The notes: generated from the letters alone by a model not told the origin. A stretch of DNA of 64,000 nucleotides from Oikopleura dioica (GCA_907165135.1 OU015567.1:11284001-11348000), one strand, 5' to 3'. Counted from the stretch's first letter, positions 3,901 through 59,200 are shown. Program-made: numbers and translations.

Positions 3901-6900
3901 GTTTATGCCCCGTTTTAGGGAATAATAAATAAGCCATTCGGGAGGTCTTTAATCAGCCGCTCGGGATTCTCTTTTCCGCTGCTACTAATTAGGTGATTAC
4001 CGGGCTCCTTGTTAGCCAGCAGAGGTTGTTATTAGATGCTGATTGTTTTTTGAAAAGGCCAAGATGAATAACTGCTGTTTTTCGCCGCAGAAATAAGATT
4101 TTTAACCATATTCTTATTCTTGGACTTCTACGGGATTGCTTATTGAATTCTAGCGCTCCTTGCATACCCTCTTGTTTTGAATGGCATCTACTGCATAAGC
4201 AAATCAAATGCGGTCGAAAAGAGAGCGTTAGTCTTTAAAATTAAAATTTCAGAATAGAATCTGAATTCTTCATCTATTTGCACCTATTTCATGCAATATG
4301 CACTCCCGTGAGTTTGATCAACTTGCACATGTTTTCTTGAAACGGGAAGCCATAGAAATGTTCAACAAGTAGAGTCTTTTTTCAAGCTTCTTTCTTGGGA
4401 TGAAAACAGAGAGGATTTCGAATGAGAGAATTAGGGCGAGGATGAGACCGAAGAAGTTCAAGATTAGGAATTATGGTTAGACTTGCCTGATTTTCCCTGA
4501 AATAGTTAAAATTGTATTTATGAGTCAATTTTATTTTATAGAGAAAAAAATATATTTTCGAAAGAAATCATAAACTTGTGGTTTTTAGTTTTCGATGGAA
4601 AATTCAAGGAAGAACCAAGAGCGACAGAAGGAGATGCCGGGTCGGAAGTCCAATTAACTTGTGGCCCTCCTGGTGGCTTTCCAAAGCCGGAAGTCTCCTG
4701 GTACAAGGATGAACAACTGGTTACACCTGACAATCGGCGAATACGCACTGAAATTATGACGAACGGAAAGGAAAGTGGGTCAGTTTTAATGAGTCTGAGA
4801 AATTGTGAAAAAACTGTGTTGACCCTGACTTGAGCACTATTTGGTGATCTCGAAGCTCAAAGAGTCCGACCGAGGATTTTATGTTTGCGTGGCGGAGAAC
4901 TCTGTCGGAAGAAATCAGACGGCGCCTGTGTATCTTCGTGTCAACAGTAAGTACGATCAACTAACAAATGCTTACAACTCTTAACTGCTTCTATCAGACA
5001 GGAGTCCTTATCAAGCTCTATTCCTCGGTCAAGTGAGAATTCCAAATTTCTCGAAAATTTCCACTGTTGACTTATTGATTCAAAAAAGAGCTTCGGTGAC
5101 TCTTTTGATTTTCCATTCATTCGGTCAGGAATTATCCGTTTGTCGGAAAAGTGGCTTTTCACCGCTCGTCCAGGTTGTGGACAAAGCTGGGGCATGTCCA
5201 TTTGATTTCATGGGCACACTCGGCCGGGGACAATAAGCGTTAAACGTCACAATTTGACGATTTGAGGGACCTGTGTTAGGACCCATGGCGCGTTCTGGCA
5301 ACATGGACACGTGCCGGTTGATTGATCGCTAATTTGGGCACACCCAGGCAGCCACGCGCGCCGAGGTTCTGCCTCGTCTTTTGTCGGCGCTTAGATCAAA
5401 CGGCCGCCGTTGTCAGTAAGGCACACAGCTACTAAGTATCTCAAATTTACGGAACACGTTTGAACACTAGAAAAGCAAACATCCGCCGCGAATACTATGT
5501 ATCTGACAGATGAATCGAAACCGCTTGAATACAGGAAATTAACGATTTCAAGTAACTAGAATAATATTCTCTTCCGGCGCTTGAAATGAATAAATAAATG
5601 TACACTTTGAAGTTCAATTGCCAATTCGAAATGTTTTTATTGGACTCTTGCTCAAGAACCTTTGACCAGCTTATTATTAAATACTTATAAAGAGATACTG
5701 CTTATGCTCACCGATCGATCGAAGACTCATCATCATCGAGACTCCTTTTTTGCATCAATCTCGTAAACGCAAGAGTGTCGTATTTAGTAGTAGAAACTAA
5801 ATAATGAACGCGGTTTAGGCGCCTTGCCAGGGACTAATGTAGCAAAATCACGAACGACTACTCGTAGGGGCCATCGATTTTGCCGAAACGAAAATGATCC
5901 TTTCCATTCTTTTCACCAATTTTAGCAGCGTATAAATATAGAACAATCTAATAATGGCTGTCTGAAATCATATAGCTGAACTGTATTGTAATCGACAACC
6001 TGTCAGACTCGCATACAGAATGAAGTTGATCGAAACATATGGCATTGATCTTCTATGATTTCAGTGTTATTTTCAGATCCTCCTTATTTCTTCCAAACAC
6101 TGCCAGAATTCGTTCAAGTGGAGGCAAATGTGGAAGCCGTCCTGCCGTGTCCGATTTCCGGAGAGCCGAAGCCTAAAATTACGTGGACGAGGCTGAACTC
6201 GAACCTGCCGAGCAAGCGCCTTTTCGGGTCAAATGACGAACTAAGAATACCCCAAATGAGTCCTGAAGATCAGGTAAGAGCTTGCGGAAGGTCTATTTAG
6301 CGATTTTGAACGAAAAGAATCAATTTTTTATGATGGTTCTCGACCGGTTAGGGAGCGGTAAATATTTCTACGCACGTGGACCATCTTTTTAAATATACAT
6401 TCACAGGAGTAACACATTTTCTTTCTGAAGGGCATCTACAAATGCACTGGCGAGAACTCGTTGGACTCCATCAGTGGTCAAATTGAACTTCGTTTATCCT
6501 CCGGGCCGAAGTTCCTCTCTTCGCCTAAGAATAAGACAATCCGTGAAGGAAAAGTCGCTCGCTTCTCATGTCGCATAACTGCCATTCCAGCGCCGATCAT
6601 CACGTGGAAAAAAGCCTCCGACATCATCGTGAACGACCGCCATTTTGACGTGAAATCGAATGGAGAATTAACTATTCAAAATGTTGCTGAGAGTGATGCT
6701 GGGGATTATACTTGTATTGGAAAGAATGATTTCGGGCAAATTGAGAAAACCGTCTCGCTAGAAATCACAAAATTTGACCTCAGGTAAGAATTATAATAAT
6801 GACAGTTTTTTGATATTATTCCTTCAGAGAGCCTCCCGTCATCCGTGGAGTAAGCTTTACAGATGGAGCTGTTGCATGTGAAATGCAGAATGCGAATGAG

Positions 6901-53364: not shown

Positions 53365-55846
53365 ATGTCGAACATGGTCACGAAGGATGATTTCAAAAAA
53401 CTTTTTGCGCGGCCGGAAATCATGAAAAAAGTGCTGGTGCAGTTTTGTCAAGCTCGTCGAGACGAGTCGATTGGTATAGGTCACTCTTGAAAATTTCAAG
53501 AATTAACCGGTTAACCGGCTGATTACCGGAAATCACGTTGTCAGCTCCCGTTTTTGTTCTAGTCGTCGGATTTTCATGTTTGAAACGTCAAAATGATCCT
53601 TATGATCAGGGCTTCTGTAGCCTCCGAGATGAGCCCCATGTCTCAACTCCTGCCGAGCTTATCACTAAAAGTTTGAATTTTACGCACTTTTTTCACTTTG
53701 AAAGTTCATAACGTAAAATTTTTACAGTAAATACTAATAAATCTTCTGCGGTTTTAAAAGAGAATAAAAAATTAATAATACCCACCGTTCAAAACTTTGC
53801 AACCAGCCGGTAAAAAAGCGCTGAATCAAAATTATGCCCTCCAATACCAATTTTTTGATTATATTTTTCTCCTCAAAGATCGAAACTATAACCGGGACAT
53901 TTTTGCACAAAATCAATGCTTTTTCTTTTGAAAGAAGATTTTACGGAGAATAAAGGGGTCTTTTTGAATTTCGAATTCCATAACTGGAACTTCTTGTATC
54001 ACCTCCTCCACTGCTCGCTTTTTTGTCAGGTTGACCAAGTTTGATTGTAGTAGACATTTGATGCCTTCTAGGACATTTGAGATGTTTTGTCAAGCGCCTG
54101 GATGAGCAAATCTCTTCTTGGAAAACTCGGCTTTGAGGAAACTTCAGTTAATTTCGAATTTTTCTCTTCGCTTTCAGCTCGGACGAGTTGGTAGACAATT
54201 GAATTCATCTCATGTTTTCAGTCCAACATCAATCAAATCTTTGAGCAGAATTTGAAAAAATGATGAGCGCAAGCTCACACACTCACGTAAAATTTCAAAG
54301 CAACTGCTCGCGCTCACTCACTCACCTTAAAATTGCGAAATCTCTGCTCGCGCTCGCTCATGGCCAAATTTTTGGAAAAGTAACGTCCGCGACCAAGCAT
54401 AGCCAGATTTCCGAAATTTTTCTTGATTTCATCTTTTAAGGGTACTACCTTCGATTCCCCCAAGTTTAACCTTGAAAAACTCAGTACTAAGTCATCTAGG
54501 AGGTCTTCATATAGGCTTTCCTTGATTTAAAAAACGGCTAAATTTCGGCGTGAAGTCAACATTTTTCCCAAAATGGCCTATGATTTGAGTGACATGATTG
54601 ACAACTGAGAAGCCGGGACTGATAAGAATTTTTCATTTTTGAACTTATTTGTTCTGAATGATCGCGGTTTACGTTCAATTGCAATAAAAATTCAATTAAG
54701 ATTTGAATATAATCAAAAAAGTGGTGTTTGAGGGCATTATTTTAATTTAGCGCTTTTTTACCGGCTGGTTACAAGGTTTTGAACGGTGGGTATTATTAAT
54801 TTTTTATTCTCTTTTAAAACCGCAGAAGATTTATTAGTATTTACTGTAAAAATTTTACGTTATGAACTTTCAAAGTGAAAAAAGTGCGTAAAATTCAAAC
54901 TTTTAGTGATAAGCTCGGCAGGAGTTGAGATATGGGGCTCATCTCGGAGGCTACAGAAGCCCTGATCATAAGGATCATTTTGACGTTTCAAACATGAAAA
55001 TCCGACGACTAGAACAAAAACGGGAGCTGACAACGTGATTTCCGGTAATCAGCCGGTTAACCGGTTAATCCTTGAAATTTTCAAGAGTGACCTATACCAA
55101 TCGACTCGTCTCGACGAGCTTGACAAAACTGCACCAGCACTTTTTTCATGATTTCCGGCCGCGCAAAAAATTTTTTGAAATCATCAAGCTGGATACCACG
55201 GGTGTGCTTACTGTCGAGGATTTCATCAAATCTTTGAAAAGTGGCGACTTGAAGTATCAAGTCAAAGCTGAAAAGCAAAGAAGATTTGGTGATGGACATT
55301 TTAATCGACCAGTTTAGGCTTCAAAATCTAAAAAAATATATTCTCTAATACAAATTTCATAGCCCATGAAAAGAGCTTGAATCTGTAACGGTCGATTCAG
55401 ACCATCGAGGCATTATTCTTCGCCCTGTCTTCCGGATGTCAGTCCATCATCCTGGTAATTACATAATTTTATCAACGAAAAATATTTCAATAATTTCAGT
55501 CGTTTGTCATATGAATGGCTGCTCGGACGCGCAAATTGCCCTGTCAACCTGGCAATCGCCAAAATTTTCGTCTTGGTCGAACCGATTTGGCAACGACTCT
55601 CTTTATCAAACTCCAAGAGCAAGTTCGAGGCATCTTCGAAAATGTTCAGAAGCCGGTGATAGCTGTGGCAGTCAAAGAGTAACGAAAAAAGTTCAATCAA
55701 TCGAGGAGAAGATTTGTGATAATTTTCGTGCTGCAGCTGATTTTGGCAAGAAAATGATCAATTCTTACATTTCCAGTGTTTCTGGAGGCTCCGACTATGG
55801 ATCAAAAGAAAGTGATATTAGGCAAGATTGCTTTCGATACTTTTGA
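53365..55846 (+). CDS. Uncharacterised gene interrupted by the foldback element (candidate transposon-derived intron)
   Basis: ATG 53365 MSNMVTK joins LDTTGVLTVEDFIKSLKSGDLKYQ at 55189 in frame. Downstream exons (..ELESVTVDSDHRGIILRPV..HHP/VVCHMNGC..CFRYF*) have consistent phase-1 introns. Confidence 0.5.
53386..55185. mobile_element. Foldback element with about 480-bp inverted arms and an about 840-bp non-coding spacer
   Basis: 53386-53865 is the reverse complement of 54706-55185 with few mismatches (near-identical in the outer 400 bp); AAG on both sides (53383-53385, 55186-55188). Confidence 0.92.
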
Positions 55847-55877
55847 ATAACTTAAATGTAGTAATCATGAAAAACTA

Positions 55878-56204
55878 ATGGCGAAAAAACGCGGAAACAC
55901 TCATGCAATGAGCCGTAAACTTCGAAAGCAAATGATCACGGACAACGAGCGTAATCGACACAAGGAGCGAGTAACGAAATCAACCCTTTACTGTAACACA
56001 CCAGGATGCTCTTGTGGAGGATTCAAGTGGGAAGATCTTCGAAGGTACTTTTATTATTTGAAAAATGCATAATTTTGTATATCTAGTGCGCAAACACAAC
56101 CTGCTCCAAGTTCTGCTCGAACACGGAGCACAGTATCTGACGGCGATTACTGTGTACATCAAAATCAAAGAACTCGACTTGCTTGGAAATATATTTTTTT
56201 GTAG
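55878..56204 (+). CDS. Small basic Cys-containing protein (two exons)
   Basis: MAKKRGNTHAMSRKLRKQ..YCNTPGCSCGGFKW; GT-AG intron 56045-56086; starts 31 nt after the upstream stop. Confidence 0.5.
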
Positions 56205-56223
56205 AAAAATAAAGATTGAATGA

Positions 56224-59200
56224 TTAAATTTCGTCCTCGTCTTCGAGGGACTCGCCAGCTTTGAGCTTGCGGATGATTTCCTTGAGCTTGGCGACTTCCT
56301 TGTTGTCTGCGTTTTTGGAAGCTGTGTTTTTGATCTCTTTGACTCGAGCAGCATAGGTCAAGGAAGTGACGGTTTCGTCCTGGTTGTACTCGACAGGAGA
56401 GATGTTTACGAACATAAGGGTCTTTGCATTTCCACCTGAGCAATTGATTAAAATTAATGGATGAGATATTCTTACCGAGAGAATCCTGCATAAGCTCAGT
56501 AAGTTTGTTGTTTCTGTAAGGAACGAATTGAGCTTCTGTACTGAGAGCATGAATGACATCACCAAGAGCTAAGATAAAATGAGCAAGAGAGCGTTCTTTA
56601 TATAAAACCTGAGAGCGATTTATTGATAGAATTCGCTTCCTTTAGCTGCTGCTGAGTAGCTCCCGTCTTTGCCGCTCTTTCTGAACCAGCCAAATCGATA
56701 AGTGAGAACTTTCCTCGATTGACGCTGCCAGTTGTCTTGTTTTTCACTTCTAGTAGAACGGAGAAGATCAAATGTGATCGAGAGGATTCGGAATTCATCT
56801 TTGTACTGGCGACTTTTCTGTTGGAGGTTCCTTTCTCGAAGATTCCATTCAACGCCTCGAGATCAGCCGCTTCTTCGATAACCGATCCCTGGACGTAGAC
56901 CATTCCTTTCTTATCCTTCTTGATCAAGTACTTCGCTGGAGCGTCGATTTTATCAGCAAGAAGGTCTTGAATTTGATCACAATAAAGTTCCATCATGTAA
57001 CAAGAGACTTTTGTCTCAAACTTGTCTTCATTCTCTTTTATGATTTCGAAAAGACCGCCAAATGCTCGCGGAGCAAGACCAGGAAAGTCTTCATTACCAA
57101 TCATGGTGAATGTTTTGCCGGAACCGGTCTGACCATAAGCTAGAACATAAATTAAGGAAATTGATAATAATCAGACTCATACCGAAGATGCAAACATTGA
57201 ATCCGTCAAAGGCTGATTGCAGGAGGAAGCTTGTATCGTTGAAAACATCTTCTTGCTTACTTTCAGCCGTGAAAACCTGGTCGAAATTGAACTCTTTAGT
57301 TCCTCGATTGGTTGTATTGATCTTGATTGTATATTCATCAGGTGACTCGACGACGTTGAAATTTCCGCGCTCTTTTTCGGTGTTGGAAATCGGCCTAGAT
57401 CGACAGTACACTCTGACCTTGCCCTTCATGTCCTCAATAATGTTGTAATATTTCTTTCGGAGAAGCATTTCCTTCTGGTATTTTTCGGTGATTTCTGCAA
57501 CCTCAGCCTTCGCTTCACGGAGCTCTTTCTGCAATTTCTTCTGATCAGCAGTAAGTTTTGCCACTTCTTCTTCTAACTTGTCAATTTTCTCCAAATCCTT
57601 TCCATGATTCTTTGTAGATCGCTCAAGTTTCTTCAATTTTTCAGAGTGTTCTTTGCAGAGGTCTTGTTGCTCCTTCAGTTTTTTCTTTGTTTCCTCATAC
57701 CGATTCTTGTACTTTTCAAGGTCTCCATCAGTTTTATTGAGTTTTGTCTGAACCATGGTTTTTTCGCGAGTCATTGTCAGATCATTCTTGCGAATCTGTT
57801 TTTCAAGATCATTTCGTTCGCGCTCCAAGACTTTGATCTTCGCCTAATTTTTGTCATATTTTTATGAAACATTATTAAAATCGTAATGATATCTTACCTG
57901 TAAGTCCTTGACTTGAGCATTGTCCCCAGTCCTGTTTCCTCTTACGGCAGCTGCTGCAACTGCAGTTGCTGCTCGACGAGGATTGCGTTTTGCTTCATCT
58001 TTGAACTGCTCCTTTTGTTTGAGCTGTTTTTCTAGCTTTTCAACCTTTCGTTTTTCTTCAGCTAGCTGATTGTTGAGCTCGTGGTTGGAGCTGTCTAATT
58101 TCTTTAGCTGATCTTCCATCTCGATGGCATGCGTTTCAAGATCCGCCATTCGTTTCTGATCTTCAGTTGTATCCGGTTCTTCGAGCGATTTGACGAGAGC
58201 TGCGATTTTAACCTTCTGTGCTGCATCGTTCTCATCCGCTTCGGCTAGTTTTCTCTCCAATTCGATAACATCGGCTTTGAGTTTTTCTACGAGCTCGCTT
58301 TGGTCTTCCATCAATTCAAGTTGCATCTGCGTTGTGTAGAATTTCTCCAAGAGTTCTTCGTCATTCATGATTTGGTCTGCAACTTGTTTTTCTTGATTAG
58401 CAGTGCCGGCTTCCATCGCAGCGACCTTTGTCATGAGCTCTTCGTTCTCGCATTTGGCTTCTCGAAGCTCATTTTCGAGTTCTTTAACGTACGAGTCGTC
58501 GTGAGTTCCTACTAGCGGGCCATCCGGGACAGAATCACCAGAATCGCCACTATTTTTGACGTGAGAAGCAACAGCAACTGCGCCCCCGGCTTTGAGGGCG
58601 GCATTTTCTCTTTTCAGGTCTTCGATCTCATTGCTGAACTTTTTTCGATCAGTTTCAGCTTTTTCGATGACTTCTTTCATGTCATCGCCGTAATTGGCCT
58701 CACGCTTTTCTTTTTCTTGCTTGAAAGCCAGGAGAAGGCATTTGAGTTGTTCTTTTAGTCTTCCATTCTGCTGTCTCAAATTTGTCATGTGGCCGTTCAT
58801 CTGCTCGGATTTTGTATCTTAGATCAAATTCAGTGTTAAATAAGGACAAAGTATGCATACCCAAATCAGACTTGGCTGCTTTGTACGCCTTTCTCATAAC
58901 TTCATATTTGATGGAGTACTGAGATTTCATTTGGACAACAAACGCTGAAAAATGTCCGTTTGCCTCGACCTCGATTTCTTTGTACTTTTGCTCAAGATTT
59001 CGGATGTCTTTGAGAAACGCTTGTTTTATCCCATCATTTTGTGCAAGAATCTTGGCAATATATGCCTTTGCAGTATCGTATGGGATGTATTGTCGCTCAT
59101 TTTTGCTTAAATTATTATTTCGTTTCAAAAGTGACTTTGCTTCTACTCACTTGAGAACAACTTGCGTGGAAAGATCAAGCTGAACGGGTGCCTCCTCGTT

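What the first reader, a model, noticed from the sequence alone, without database searches (positions are those of the whole stretch)
53365..55317. A 1.8-kb foldback transposon that may act as a self-made GA-AG intron
Seen: 480-bp inverted arms (53386-53865 / 54706-55185) with termini GATG...CATC and AAG on both flanks. The element starts with GA directly after the left AAG, and the right AAG supplies an AG acceptor preceded by a T-rich tract. Excising 53386-55188 gives ATG TCG AAC ATG GTC ACG AAG | CTG GAT ACC (MSNMVTK-LDTTGVLTVEDFIK...), exactly the pre-insertion sequence, and this continues into further spliceable exons. The right arm has no in-frame ATG, so the downstream exon needs the left-hand start. 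Established: this lineage splices GA-AG introns, and TE insertions whose target duplication supplies a splice site are a recognised route of intron gain. Inference: this is a young intron created by a long-TIR element whose arms would pair and bring donor and acceptor together. The GATG terminus with a 3-bp TSD does not match CACTA (CAC...) or PIF/Harbinger (TAA/TTA) rules, so it may be an unclassified family. Caveats: a 3-bp match arises by chance 1 time in 64, and the donor GATGAT differs from the GAAAG/GAAGG seen in the other GA introns here.
Basis: partly seen in the sequence, partly recalled or inferred. Interest (0 to 1): 0.78.

Follow-up and report, generated by a model that had tools for sequence, protein, structure and literature searches.

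The report
Young foldback transposon splitting a first exon
A 1.8-kb hairpin-shaped jumping-DNA element has landed seven codons into the first coding exon of a real Oikopleura dioica gene; it could be spliced out exactly as a GA-AG intron on paper, but nothing available shows that it is.

Summary
The arms 53386-53865 and 54706-55185 are 480 nt long and 98% complementary, with AAG on both flanks.

The element is a real non-autonomous DNA transposon. Its 20-nt terminus occurs 232 times in the genome, against 0 for the control pattern. Of 50 copies, 36 have a 3-bp target duplication and 10 have a 4-bp one, with no target consensus.

The genome is Oikopleura dioica OKI2018_I69 and the host gene is chr2.g7183.

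The split ORF is a true, constrained first exon:
- A North-Atlantic-type metagenome contig and seven ORFs from other lineages carry the uninterrupted MVTK|L site.
- dN/dS is about 0.12.
- A transcript-type protein from a sister lineage joins this exon to the next.

Removing 53386-55188 restores the ancestral sequence, as a GA...AG unit.

Splicing remains unshown, and five points count against it:
- The donor lacks the conserved +3 A.
- The donor and the T-tract lie inside a 480-bp duplex.
- AG-ending duplications occur at chance frequency (3 of 46).
- The family is depleted from coding DNA.
- Another exonic copy is absent from other DNA samples.

The reference annotation starts the gene downstream of the element. 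This is weak evidence, because intron 1 is itself non-canonical.

This scan has reported young transposons inside coding exons of this genome several times before, on other DNA.

The parts
53365..53385 (+). Exon 1, 5' part, of gene chr2.g7183 (MSNMVTK). The start conserved across lineages is the ATG at 53374 (MVTK). The last three bases, 53383-53385, are the left copy of the AAG target duplication.
   Evidence: Orthologues read M(K)MVTKL... without interruption.
53386..53865 (.). Left inverted arm of the foldback element, with terminus GATGATTTCAAAAAACTTTT.
53866..54705 (.). Internal 840 bp between the arms. The first ~360 bp are shared with the other 480-bp-arm copies and are 85-91% identical to an exon of a host gene at C5:15050609-15051039, so they look like a captured gene fragment. 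The rest matches other dispersed repeats. No transposase ORF is present.
54706..55185 (.). Right inverted arm, ending ...GAAATCATC.
55186..55188 (+). Right copy of the AAG target duplication. It would supply the AG acceptor of the proposed GA-AG intron 53386-55188.
55189..55312 (+). Exon 1, 3' part (LDTTGVLTVEDFIKSLKSGDLKYQVKAEKQRRFGDGHFNRP, then the first base of the next codon). It is coding and under purifying selection.
   Evidence: Representative search hit P0003 and its cluster. Against L073, dN is 0.155 and dS 1.26, with 21 of 32 differences at third codon positions. P0024 joins ...NRP to ELESV.
55313..55373 (+). Intron 1, 61 nt. Its boundaries are ambiguous by one base: TT...AG as listed here, or GT...AA at 55312-55372. 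It is non-canonical either way.
   Evidence: The junction NRP|ELESV in the transcript-type protein P0024, mapped on the window and on L073. This is an inference for this genome.
55374..55456 (+). Exon 2 (ELESVTVDSDHRGIILRPVFRMSVHHP). It contains the ATG at 55436 where the reference annotation starts the CDS.
   Evidence: about 18 synonymous against about 6 non-synonymous differences to L073, by Nei-Gojobori counting.
55457..55501 (+). Intron 2, 45 nt, GT-AG.
   Evidence: A gap of 15 codons in the alignment of P0022 and P0024 to the window; sequence read.
55502..55821 (+). Exon 3 (VVCHMNGCSDAQ...SKESDI).
55822..55861 (+). Intron 3, 40 nt. It is GC-AG here, while the orthologue L073 has GT at this donor.
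55862..56044 (+). Exon 4 (NHEKLMAKKRGNTH...CSCGGFKWEDLR).
56087..56204 (+). Exon 5 and the stop codon of g7183. Intron 4 is 56045-56086, GT-AG.

Best explanation
The feature is a non-autonomous, foldback-type DNA transposon 1,800 bp long, with two 480-bp arms and an 840-bp middle. The middle includes a captured host-gene fragment and encodes no transposase.

The element belongs to a family of roughly 115 copies in Oikopleura dioica OKI2018_I69. Most copies are ~640-bp hairpin MITEs. They duplicate 3 target bases, or less often 4, with no target consensus.

This copy inserted at an AAG seven codons into the first coding exon of gene chr2.g7183. That gene encodes a small Cys-containing protein of unknown function, conserved among Oikopleura lineages. 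All of this is shown by tool results.

What follows is inferred. Most likely this is a fairly recent insertion allele, possibly specific to one haplotype, and it is not efficiently spliced out. The normal start codon would then be followed by 34 element-derived codons and a stop. The gene copy would be either null or expressed as an N-terminally shortened protein from the ATG at 55436, where the reference annotation starts it.

The GA (from the terminus) plus AG (from the AAG duplication) geometry is best read as a 1-in-16 coincidence of the target site, not a property of the family.
For: Transposon identity:
- Arms are 480 nt and 98% complementary.
- The terminus occurs 232 times, against 0 for the control.
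- Of 50 copies, 36 have a 3-bp and 10 a 4-bp duplication.
- The flanks are single copy.
- There is no long ORF inside the element.

Exon identity:
- P0003 and six cluster members read MVTKL... without interruption.
- The orthologous contig L073 has an empty site.
- dN/dS is about 0.12 and differences fall mostly at third codon positions.
- The transcript-type protein P0024 joins exon 1 to exon 2.
- The organism and gene were identified through P0022, and the assembly size matches PMC8008620.

Against a family-level splicing design:
- AG-ending duplications number 3 of 46, where 1 in 16 is expected.
- Insertion sites are less coding-like than 1,586 background positions (Mann-Whitney p = 0.0006; score >= 10 in 14% against 39%).
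- Other exonic copies cannot be excised exactly by any G-N...AG pair. These are L008 in an integrin-alpha exon (TSD TCT), L013 (TTT) and L059 in a cadherin-like exon (TAT).
- The L008 site is empty in ENA and Logan DNA that is 98-100% identical.
- The assembly is one of two strongly diverged haplotypes of a single male.

Weak splice signals:
- GA donors in O. dioica have a conserved AG before and an A after (PMC7072748). Here the context is AAG|GAT.
- In the predicted fold, 473 of 480 arm positions pair. The pairing starts at donor base +1 and leaves only the AAG free.
- The reference CDS starts at 55436.
Against: - The exact GA...AG geometry with an upstream AG is what a functional O. dioica GA intron needs, and this species splices thousands of GA-AG introns.
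- Transposon insertion is a listed route of intron gain in Oikopleura (PMC3443670).
- This copy has the most arm-to-arm differences of the seven 480-bp-arm copies (11, against 0-7). That hints it has been tolerated for longer than the other exonic copies, yet both halves of the exon are still open.
- The annotation argument is weak. Intron 1 of this gene is itself non-canonical, and the Bergen annotation also mis-models exon 1. Exon 1 could therefore have been dropped whatever happens to the element.
- No RNA data could be consulted.
Confidence: 0.55

Rival explanations
1. The element is removed from the pre-mRNA as an exact GA-AG intron (53386-55188). The donor GA comes from the transposon terminus and the acceptor AG from the duplicated AAG. 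The full-length protein is still made, and this is an intron caught at birth.
For: - Exact removal restores the ancestral, constrained exon.
- The upstream AG and the GA fit the O. dioica GA-AG donor pattern.
- The mechanism, with the TIR giving one site and the TSD the other, is established for introners (PMC11282704) and for MITE-derived introns in the larvacean Fritillaria.
- Oikopleura is listed among species with intron gain by transposon insertion.
- The copy has more arm divergence than the other exonic copies, yet the exon halves are intact.
- The ends lie 3 nt apart in the folded RNA.
Against: - The donor is GAT, not the conserved GAA, and the hexamer GATGAT matches the U1 target poorly by my own reading of the sequence, which no tool tested.
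- The donor, the T-tract and any nearby branch site lie inside a near-perfect 480-bp duplex.
- At 1.8 kb it compares with a median intron of 49 nt.
- The family shows chance-level AG targets and depletion from coding DNA.
- The reference gene model has no intron across the element.
Confidence: 0.3
2. The element is tolerated by some other route. One possibility is inexact or cryptic splicing that leaves or removes a few codons. Another is removal guided by the hairpin, independent of GT/GA-AG. A third is transcription starting in or after the right arm, giving an mRNA translated from the ATG at 55436 as a functional shorter protein.
For: - Other copies sit in exons of large genes that still look intact, although their duplications cannot provide an AG. 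Examples are L059 in a cadherin-like gene with an open 1,078-codon exon, and L008 in an integrin-alpha gene.
- The reference CDS begins at 55436.
- Intron 1 of this very gene is GT..AA or TT..AG, so unusual splice choices do occur at this locus.
Against: - Exon 1 and the part of exon 2 before the ATG at 55436 are under purifying selection, so the N-terminus matters.
- The private divergence of L059 is only 0.9%, so the intactness of its gene says little.
- The L008 site is polymorphic.
- No combination of cryptic sites was found that is shared by the copies.
Confidence: 0.15

Closest known systems
Introner-type transposon-born introns (Micromonas, Aureococcus and others; Huff et al. 2016, reviewed in PMC11282704)
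   Same: A non-autonomous DNA transposon with terminal inverted repeats and a 3-nt target duplication. One splice site comes from the element's terminus and the other from the duplicated target. Exact removal restores the exon.
   Different: Introner families sit overwhelmingly inside genes and are shown to be spliced. This family is depleted from coding DNA, has no AG target preference, and no splicing has been shown. The arms are 480 bp rather than short TIRs, and the donor would be GA, not GT/GC.
MITE-derived non-canonical introns of the larvacean Fritillaria borealis (Henriet et al. 2019, as described)
   Same: The same animal group. Non-autonomous TIR elements sit in coding sequence, and the element ends and TSD form non-GT/AG splice sites.
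   Different: In Fritillaria the phenomenon is genome-wide, has RNA support, uses AG-AC/AG-AT ends and goes with a modified spliceosome. Here there is one candidate with GA-AG ends in O. dioica and no RNA evidence.
Foldback / long-TIR non-autonomous DNA transposons (for example Drosophila FB; C. elegans Tc4, whose title is cited; details from my own memory)
   Same: Almost the whole element is two long inverted arms. The arms evolve in concert: every 480-bp-arm copy has 4-21 private changes present in both arms. There is no coding capacity.
   Different: The TSD is 3-4 bp with no consensus. From memory, FB makes 9 bp and Tc4 targets TNA. No autonomous partner was identified here.
Superfamilies with 3-4-bp duplications: Academ (3 bp per PMC5199201), Sola2 (4 bp, from memory; Sola2-like elements making 3-bp TSDs in this genome are reported in earlier scan notes), CACTA/CMC, PIF/Harbinger, Zator
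   Same: A 3-bp duplication with a 20% minority of 4-bp fits Academ-like or Sola2-like enzymes best.
   Different: The termini are not CACTA. The target is not TWA. No Harbinger or CACTA transposase domain was found in the genome. The link to a Sola2-like or Academ-like transposase could not be tested, so the superfamily stays unassigned.

Membership tests
Non-autonomous class II (TIR/foldback MITE-like) transposon | Terminal inverted repeats | tested here: met
   480-nt arms at 98% complementarity; the same termini occur in more than 100 copies.
Non-autonomous class II (TIR/foldback MITE-like) transposon | Target-site duplication of constant length across independent copies | tested here: met
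   36 of 50 copies have 3 bp, 10 have 4 bp and 4 have none; the sequences differ between copies.
Non-autonomous class II (TIR/foldback MITE-like) transposon | Empty site in related DNA | tested here: met
   For the focal site, L073 and P0003/P0007-P0012 are uninterrupted, though they come from diverged lineages. For copy L008, P0001/P0013/P0014 at 98-100% identity are empty.
Non-autonomous class II (TIR/foldback MITE-like) transposon | No transposase ORF; multiple dispersed copies | tested here: met
   Only ORFs of 40-60 aa lie wholly inside the element; the 65-81-aa ORFs that overlap it run across its ends into the flanks. No ORF of at least 80 aa is found in the longest copy. Copies lie on all five large contigs.
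Introner / transposon-born spliceosomal intron | The element lies inside a transcribed coding exon | tested here: met
   Exon 1 of g7183 is conserved, has dN/dS about 0.12, and is joined to exon 2 in the transcript-type protein P0024.
Introner / transposon-born spliceosomal intron | The terminus and TSD provide a usable donor/acceptor pair that restores the frame | tested here: inconclusive
   The GA...AG pair with exact restoration is present. However, +3 is T rather than the conserved A, and both sites lie in or next to a 480-bp duplex.
Introner / transposon-born spliceosomal intron | Removal from mRNA shown by transcripts | not testable with these tools
No Okinawan transcript-derived protein for this gene is in the collections. 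The reference CDS starts downstream.
Introner / transposon-born spliceosomal intron | The family is concentrated in genes, or its target supplies the splice site | tested here: not met
   Sites are depleted from coding-like DNA (p = 0.0006). NAG duplications number 3 of 46, which equals chance.
CACTA / CMC | Termini CACTA/CAC...; CACTA-type transposase | tested here: not met
   The termini are GATGATTTC. There is no PF02992 match in the genome, but the control search also found nothing, so that absence is weak.
PIF/Harbinger | TSD TWA; DDE_Tnp_4 transposase | tested here: not met
   Only 2 of 36 three-base TSDs are TTA/TAA. There is no PF13359 match in the genome.
Academ-like or Sola2-like | A transposase of that superfamily carrying the same termini | not tested
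   The 3-4-bp TSD is compatible. Earlier scan notes report Sola2-like elements with 3-bp TSDs in this genome.

The most novel reading that the evidence does not exclude
Oikopleura dioica may routinely remove hairpin-ended transposons from coding exons, through GA-AG where the target allows and through non-canonical or structure-guided junctions elsewhere. Fresh exonic insertions such as this one, and the integrin and cadherin copies, would then be near-neutral and would be introns at birth. That would make this a second larvacean, after Fritillaria, with an active transposon-to-intron pipeline.
Probability: 0.15. Interest if true: 0.75.

Novelty: new member of a known kind. Interest (0 to 1): 0.36.

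Why it matters
If carriers splice the element exactly, this would be a dated, allele-level example of intron birth in a chordate with a GA-AG spliceosome. The donor would come from the transposon and the acceptor from the target duplication, and empty-site relatives are available for comparison. It would also help explain why O. dioica has so many lineage-specific, non-canonical introns.

If the element is not spliced, it is an ordinary disruptive insertion allele in a very polymorphic species.

Two practical by-products follow either way:
- Both public annotations of this gene miss its conserved first exon.
- The family gives clean data on a transposase that makes 3- or 4-bp duplications, and on foldback arms that evolve in concert.

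Tried and rejected
1. Pfam on the exon pieces and on the full sister-lineage protein gave no family.
2. A word-based protein search of the 42-aa exon, in the 45-142 aa range, gave nothing. The exhaustive representative search was then needed, and it did find the homologues.
3. A codon-usage score for the 42-codon exon was uninformative. It sat at the 20th percentile of coding segments and in the top 11% of non-coding ORFs. Comparative dN/dS settled the question instead.
4. Rfam on 51800-56300 gave only sub-threshold chance hits.
5. The search for an autonomous partner failed.
   - All 480-nt arm hits pair within 4 kb.
   - Termini that looked unpaired turned out to be ordinary elements of about 330-715 bp.
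   - The 4-kb copy L068 has no ORF of at least 80 aa.
   - The extra internal match at C5:15050609 is a host gene, not a transposase.
   - No Harbinger or CACTA transposase domains were found.
   - Peptidase_C48 hits were listed, but their DNA could no longer be fetched.
6. Arm identity as an age measure was rejected as unreliable. The arms are homogenised: private changes are shared by both arms. The low arm identity of L059 is not matched by its private divergence. Arm identity and coding-likeness of the site are not correlated.
8. The joined (spliced) protein model was not searched. Exons were searched separately by reference.
9. Searches of earlier findings by sequence were blank.

Full report
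**1. Observation**

The window holds one long inverted repeat in this region. Its arms are 53386-53865 and 54706-55185, 480 nt each and 98% complementary, with 840 nt between them. The junctions read ...GTCACGAAG|GATGATTTC... and ...GAAATCATC|AAGCTGGAT.... Both flanks are single copy in the genome.

**2. Organism and host gene**

The window is contig C5:11284001-11348000 of a 64.28-Mb genome in 19 contigs. This matches the Oikopleura dioica OKI2018_I69 assembly (PMC8008620). A protein search returned the deposited protein "Oidioi.mRNA.OKI2018_I69.chr2.g7183.t1" for this locus, from a contig of the same length as C5 (P0022).

**3. It is a transposon family**

- The 20-nt terminus GATGATTTCAAAAAACTTTT occurs 232 times with up to 2 mismatches, against 0 for the reversed control. 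That implies about 115 elements.
- Most copies are ~640-bp hairpin MITEs. At least eight, including this one, have 480-bp arms and are 1.36-1.86 kb long; a ninth is 4.0 kb because a 2.4-kb piece is inserted in its left arm.
- Among 50 copies with both ends, 36 have a 3-bp target duplication, 10 a 4-bp one and 4 none. The duplicated bases differ from copy to copy and show no consensus.
- AG-ending duplications number 3 of 46, against the 1 in 16 expected by chance.
- No copy carries a transposase.
- The first ~360 bp of the middle of the 480-bp-arm copies is 85-91% identical to part of a 761-codon host ORF on the same chromosome. This looks like a captured gene fragment.
- The arms evolve in concert. 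Within-copy arm identity is 97.7-100%, while identity between copies is 92-98%. Each copy has 4-21 private changes present in both arms.

The superfamily is unassigned:
- The termini are not CACTA.
- TWA targets are rare.
- No Harbinger or CACTA transposase domain was found.
- A 3-4-bp duplication fits an Academ-like enzyme (3 bp per PMC5199201) or a Sola2-like one.
- The Sola2 idea comes only from earlier scan notes.

**4. The split ORF is a real first exon**

Pfam and the word search gave nothing for the 42-aa piece, and its codon usage was ambiguous.

The exhaustive representative search found P0003, a 51-aa ORF that is 62% identical and reads MKMVTKLNTSGVV...RFGDGHFNRPV across the insertion point. 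Its cluster holds six more such ORFs.

A JGI metagenome contig, L073 (Ga0115008_10009003), carries the orthologous locus with an empty site. Its exons 2-3 are identical to the Bergen O. dioica protein P0025. Compared with L073:
- Exon 1 has dN 0.155 and dS 1.26, and 21 of 32 differences fall at third codon positions.
- Exon 2 behaves the same way.
- The upstream 200 nt is 66% identical and intron 1 about 53% identical.

P0024 is a 271-aa protein from a 913-bp Logan contig, so it derives from spliced RNA. It runs MVTKL...GHFNRP-ELESV...HHP-VVCHMNGC... to the C-terminus. Exon 1 is therefore part of the mRNA in a sister lineage.

Mapping P0022 and P0024 on the window gives five exons (see the parts list). 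I did not search the joined protein model. Exons were searched one by one by reference, as required.

**5. Consequence of the insertion**

Without removal, translation from the ATG at 53365 runs MSNMVTK, then 34 element-derived codons, then a stop (ORF 53365-53490). No in-frame ATG exists in the right arm or in the rest of exon 1. The next in-frame ATG is at 55436, which is where the reference annotation starts the CDS. A protein from that ATG would lack 69 residues that are under purifying selection.

**6. Is it spliced?**

For:
- Exact excision of 53386-55188 restores the ancestral exon.
- O. dioica uses thousands of GA-AG introns, with a conserved AG before the GA (PMC7072748), and that AG is present here.
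- The mechanism, with the TIR giving one site and the TSD the other, is established for introners and for Fritillaria.
- Oikopleura is listed among species with intron gain by transposon insertion.
- This copy has the most arm-to-arm differences of its subfamily.

Against:
- Position +3 is T where GA donors have a conserved A.
- In the predicted fold of the pre-mRNA, 473 of 480 arm positions pair. The pairing starts at donor base +1 and covers the whole T-tract, leaving only the AAG free (MFE -1052 kcal/mol). From general knowledge, splice sites buried in stable helices are poorly recognised. The pairing that brings the ends together therefore also hides them.
- The median intron in this genome is 49 nt.
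- The family's insertion sites are significantly less coding-like than 1,586 background positions (p = 0.0006).
- The other clearly exonic copies have duplications that cannot give an AG: integrin alpha (TCT), an Ig-domain gene (TTT) and a cadherin-like gene (TAT).
- The integrin site is empty in 98-100% identical DNA from other samples.
- The assembly is one of two very different haplotypes of one male, so haplotype-specific damaging insertions are expected.

The annotation evidence is weak in both directions. Intron 1 of this gene is itself non-canonical (GT..AA or TT..AG here; GT..CA or TT..AG in L073), and the Bergen model also gets exon 1 wrong.

**7. Verdict**

- The insertion of a real transposon into a real, constrained first exon is established.
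- The "self-made intron" is a correct statement of geometry but an untested statement of function. I put it at about 0.3.
- A non-spliced or poorly spliced insertion allele gets about 0.55.
- Other rescue routes get about 0.15.

Earlier notes of this scan report the same kind of situation many times in this genome on other DNA, always without RNA. The phenomenon is a known kind, and this is a new, tidy member of it.

Noticed in passing
window 55312-55373 (and L073 about 5136-5214): Intron 1 of g7183 must be non-canonical. The transcript-type protein P0024 joins ...NRP to ELESV..., which in the window requires GT..AA (55312-55372) or TT..AG (55313-55373). In the Bergen-type contig it requires GT..CA or TT..AG.
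   Followed up: partly
window 53365-55456; proteins P0022, P0025: Both public annotations miss the conserved first exon. The OKI2018_I69 model starts at the internal ATG 55436. The Bergen model has an N-terminus (MKRKKDLETDILTDQLWLLK) that does not match the conserved exon 1 of the other lineages.
   Followed up: partly
window 55822-55861: Intron 3 is GC-AG here, while the orthologous donor in L073 is GT.
   Followed up: no
window 53866-54225; L071:7618-9903 (minus strand): The shared inner ~360 bp of the 480-bp-arm copies is 85-91% identical to part of a 761-codon host ORF at C5:15050609-15051039, which has no Pfam family. This looks like gene-fragment capture by the transposon.
   Followed up: partly
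arms of L001, L003, L004, L008, L011, L013, L015: The arms evolve in concert. Each copy has 4-21 private substitutions present in both arms, and arm identity within a copy exceeds identity between copies. In the focal copy, 8 of the 11 arm differences cluster at arm positions 411-465.
   Followed up: yes
50 family copies (loci L001-L070): The same family makes both 3-bp (36) and 4-bp (10) target duplications, which is an unusual mixed footprint.
   Followed up: yes
L008:1501-3113 (C4:8581678-8583290): A 1.6-kb copy splits an FG-GAP exon of an integrin-alpha gene between VVGS and PYW. ORFs from other samples have the site empty. One of them, P0014, has an extra Tyr two codons away (GSPYYWF), which could be unrelated or an excision scar.
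   Followed up: partly
L059:4381-5020 (C1:3687502-3688141) and L013:415-1980 (C1:10675272-10676837): Further copies sit inside coding exons. One is in a large cadherin-like gene that has an intact 1,078-codon exon nearby. The other is in an Ig I-set-like exon.
   Followed up: partly
window 55502-56204 (protein P0022): The g7183 protein contains two similar modules: VVCHMNGCSDAQ...PRASSRHLRKCSEAGDSCGSQ and LYCNTPGCSCGG...PAPSSARTRSTVSDGDYCVHQ. This points to an internal duplication. It has no Pfam family.
   Followed up: no
window 52290-52560: A GC-rich, single-copy stretch upstream of g7183 has long ORFs on both strands, poor coding scores and no Rfam match. Its nature is unknown.
   Followed up: partly
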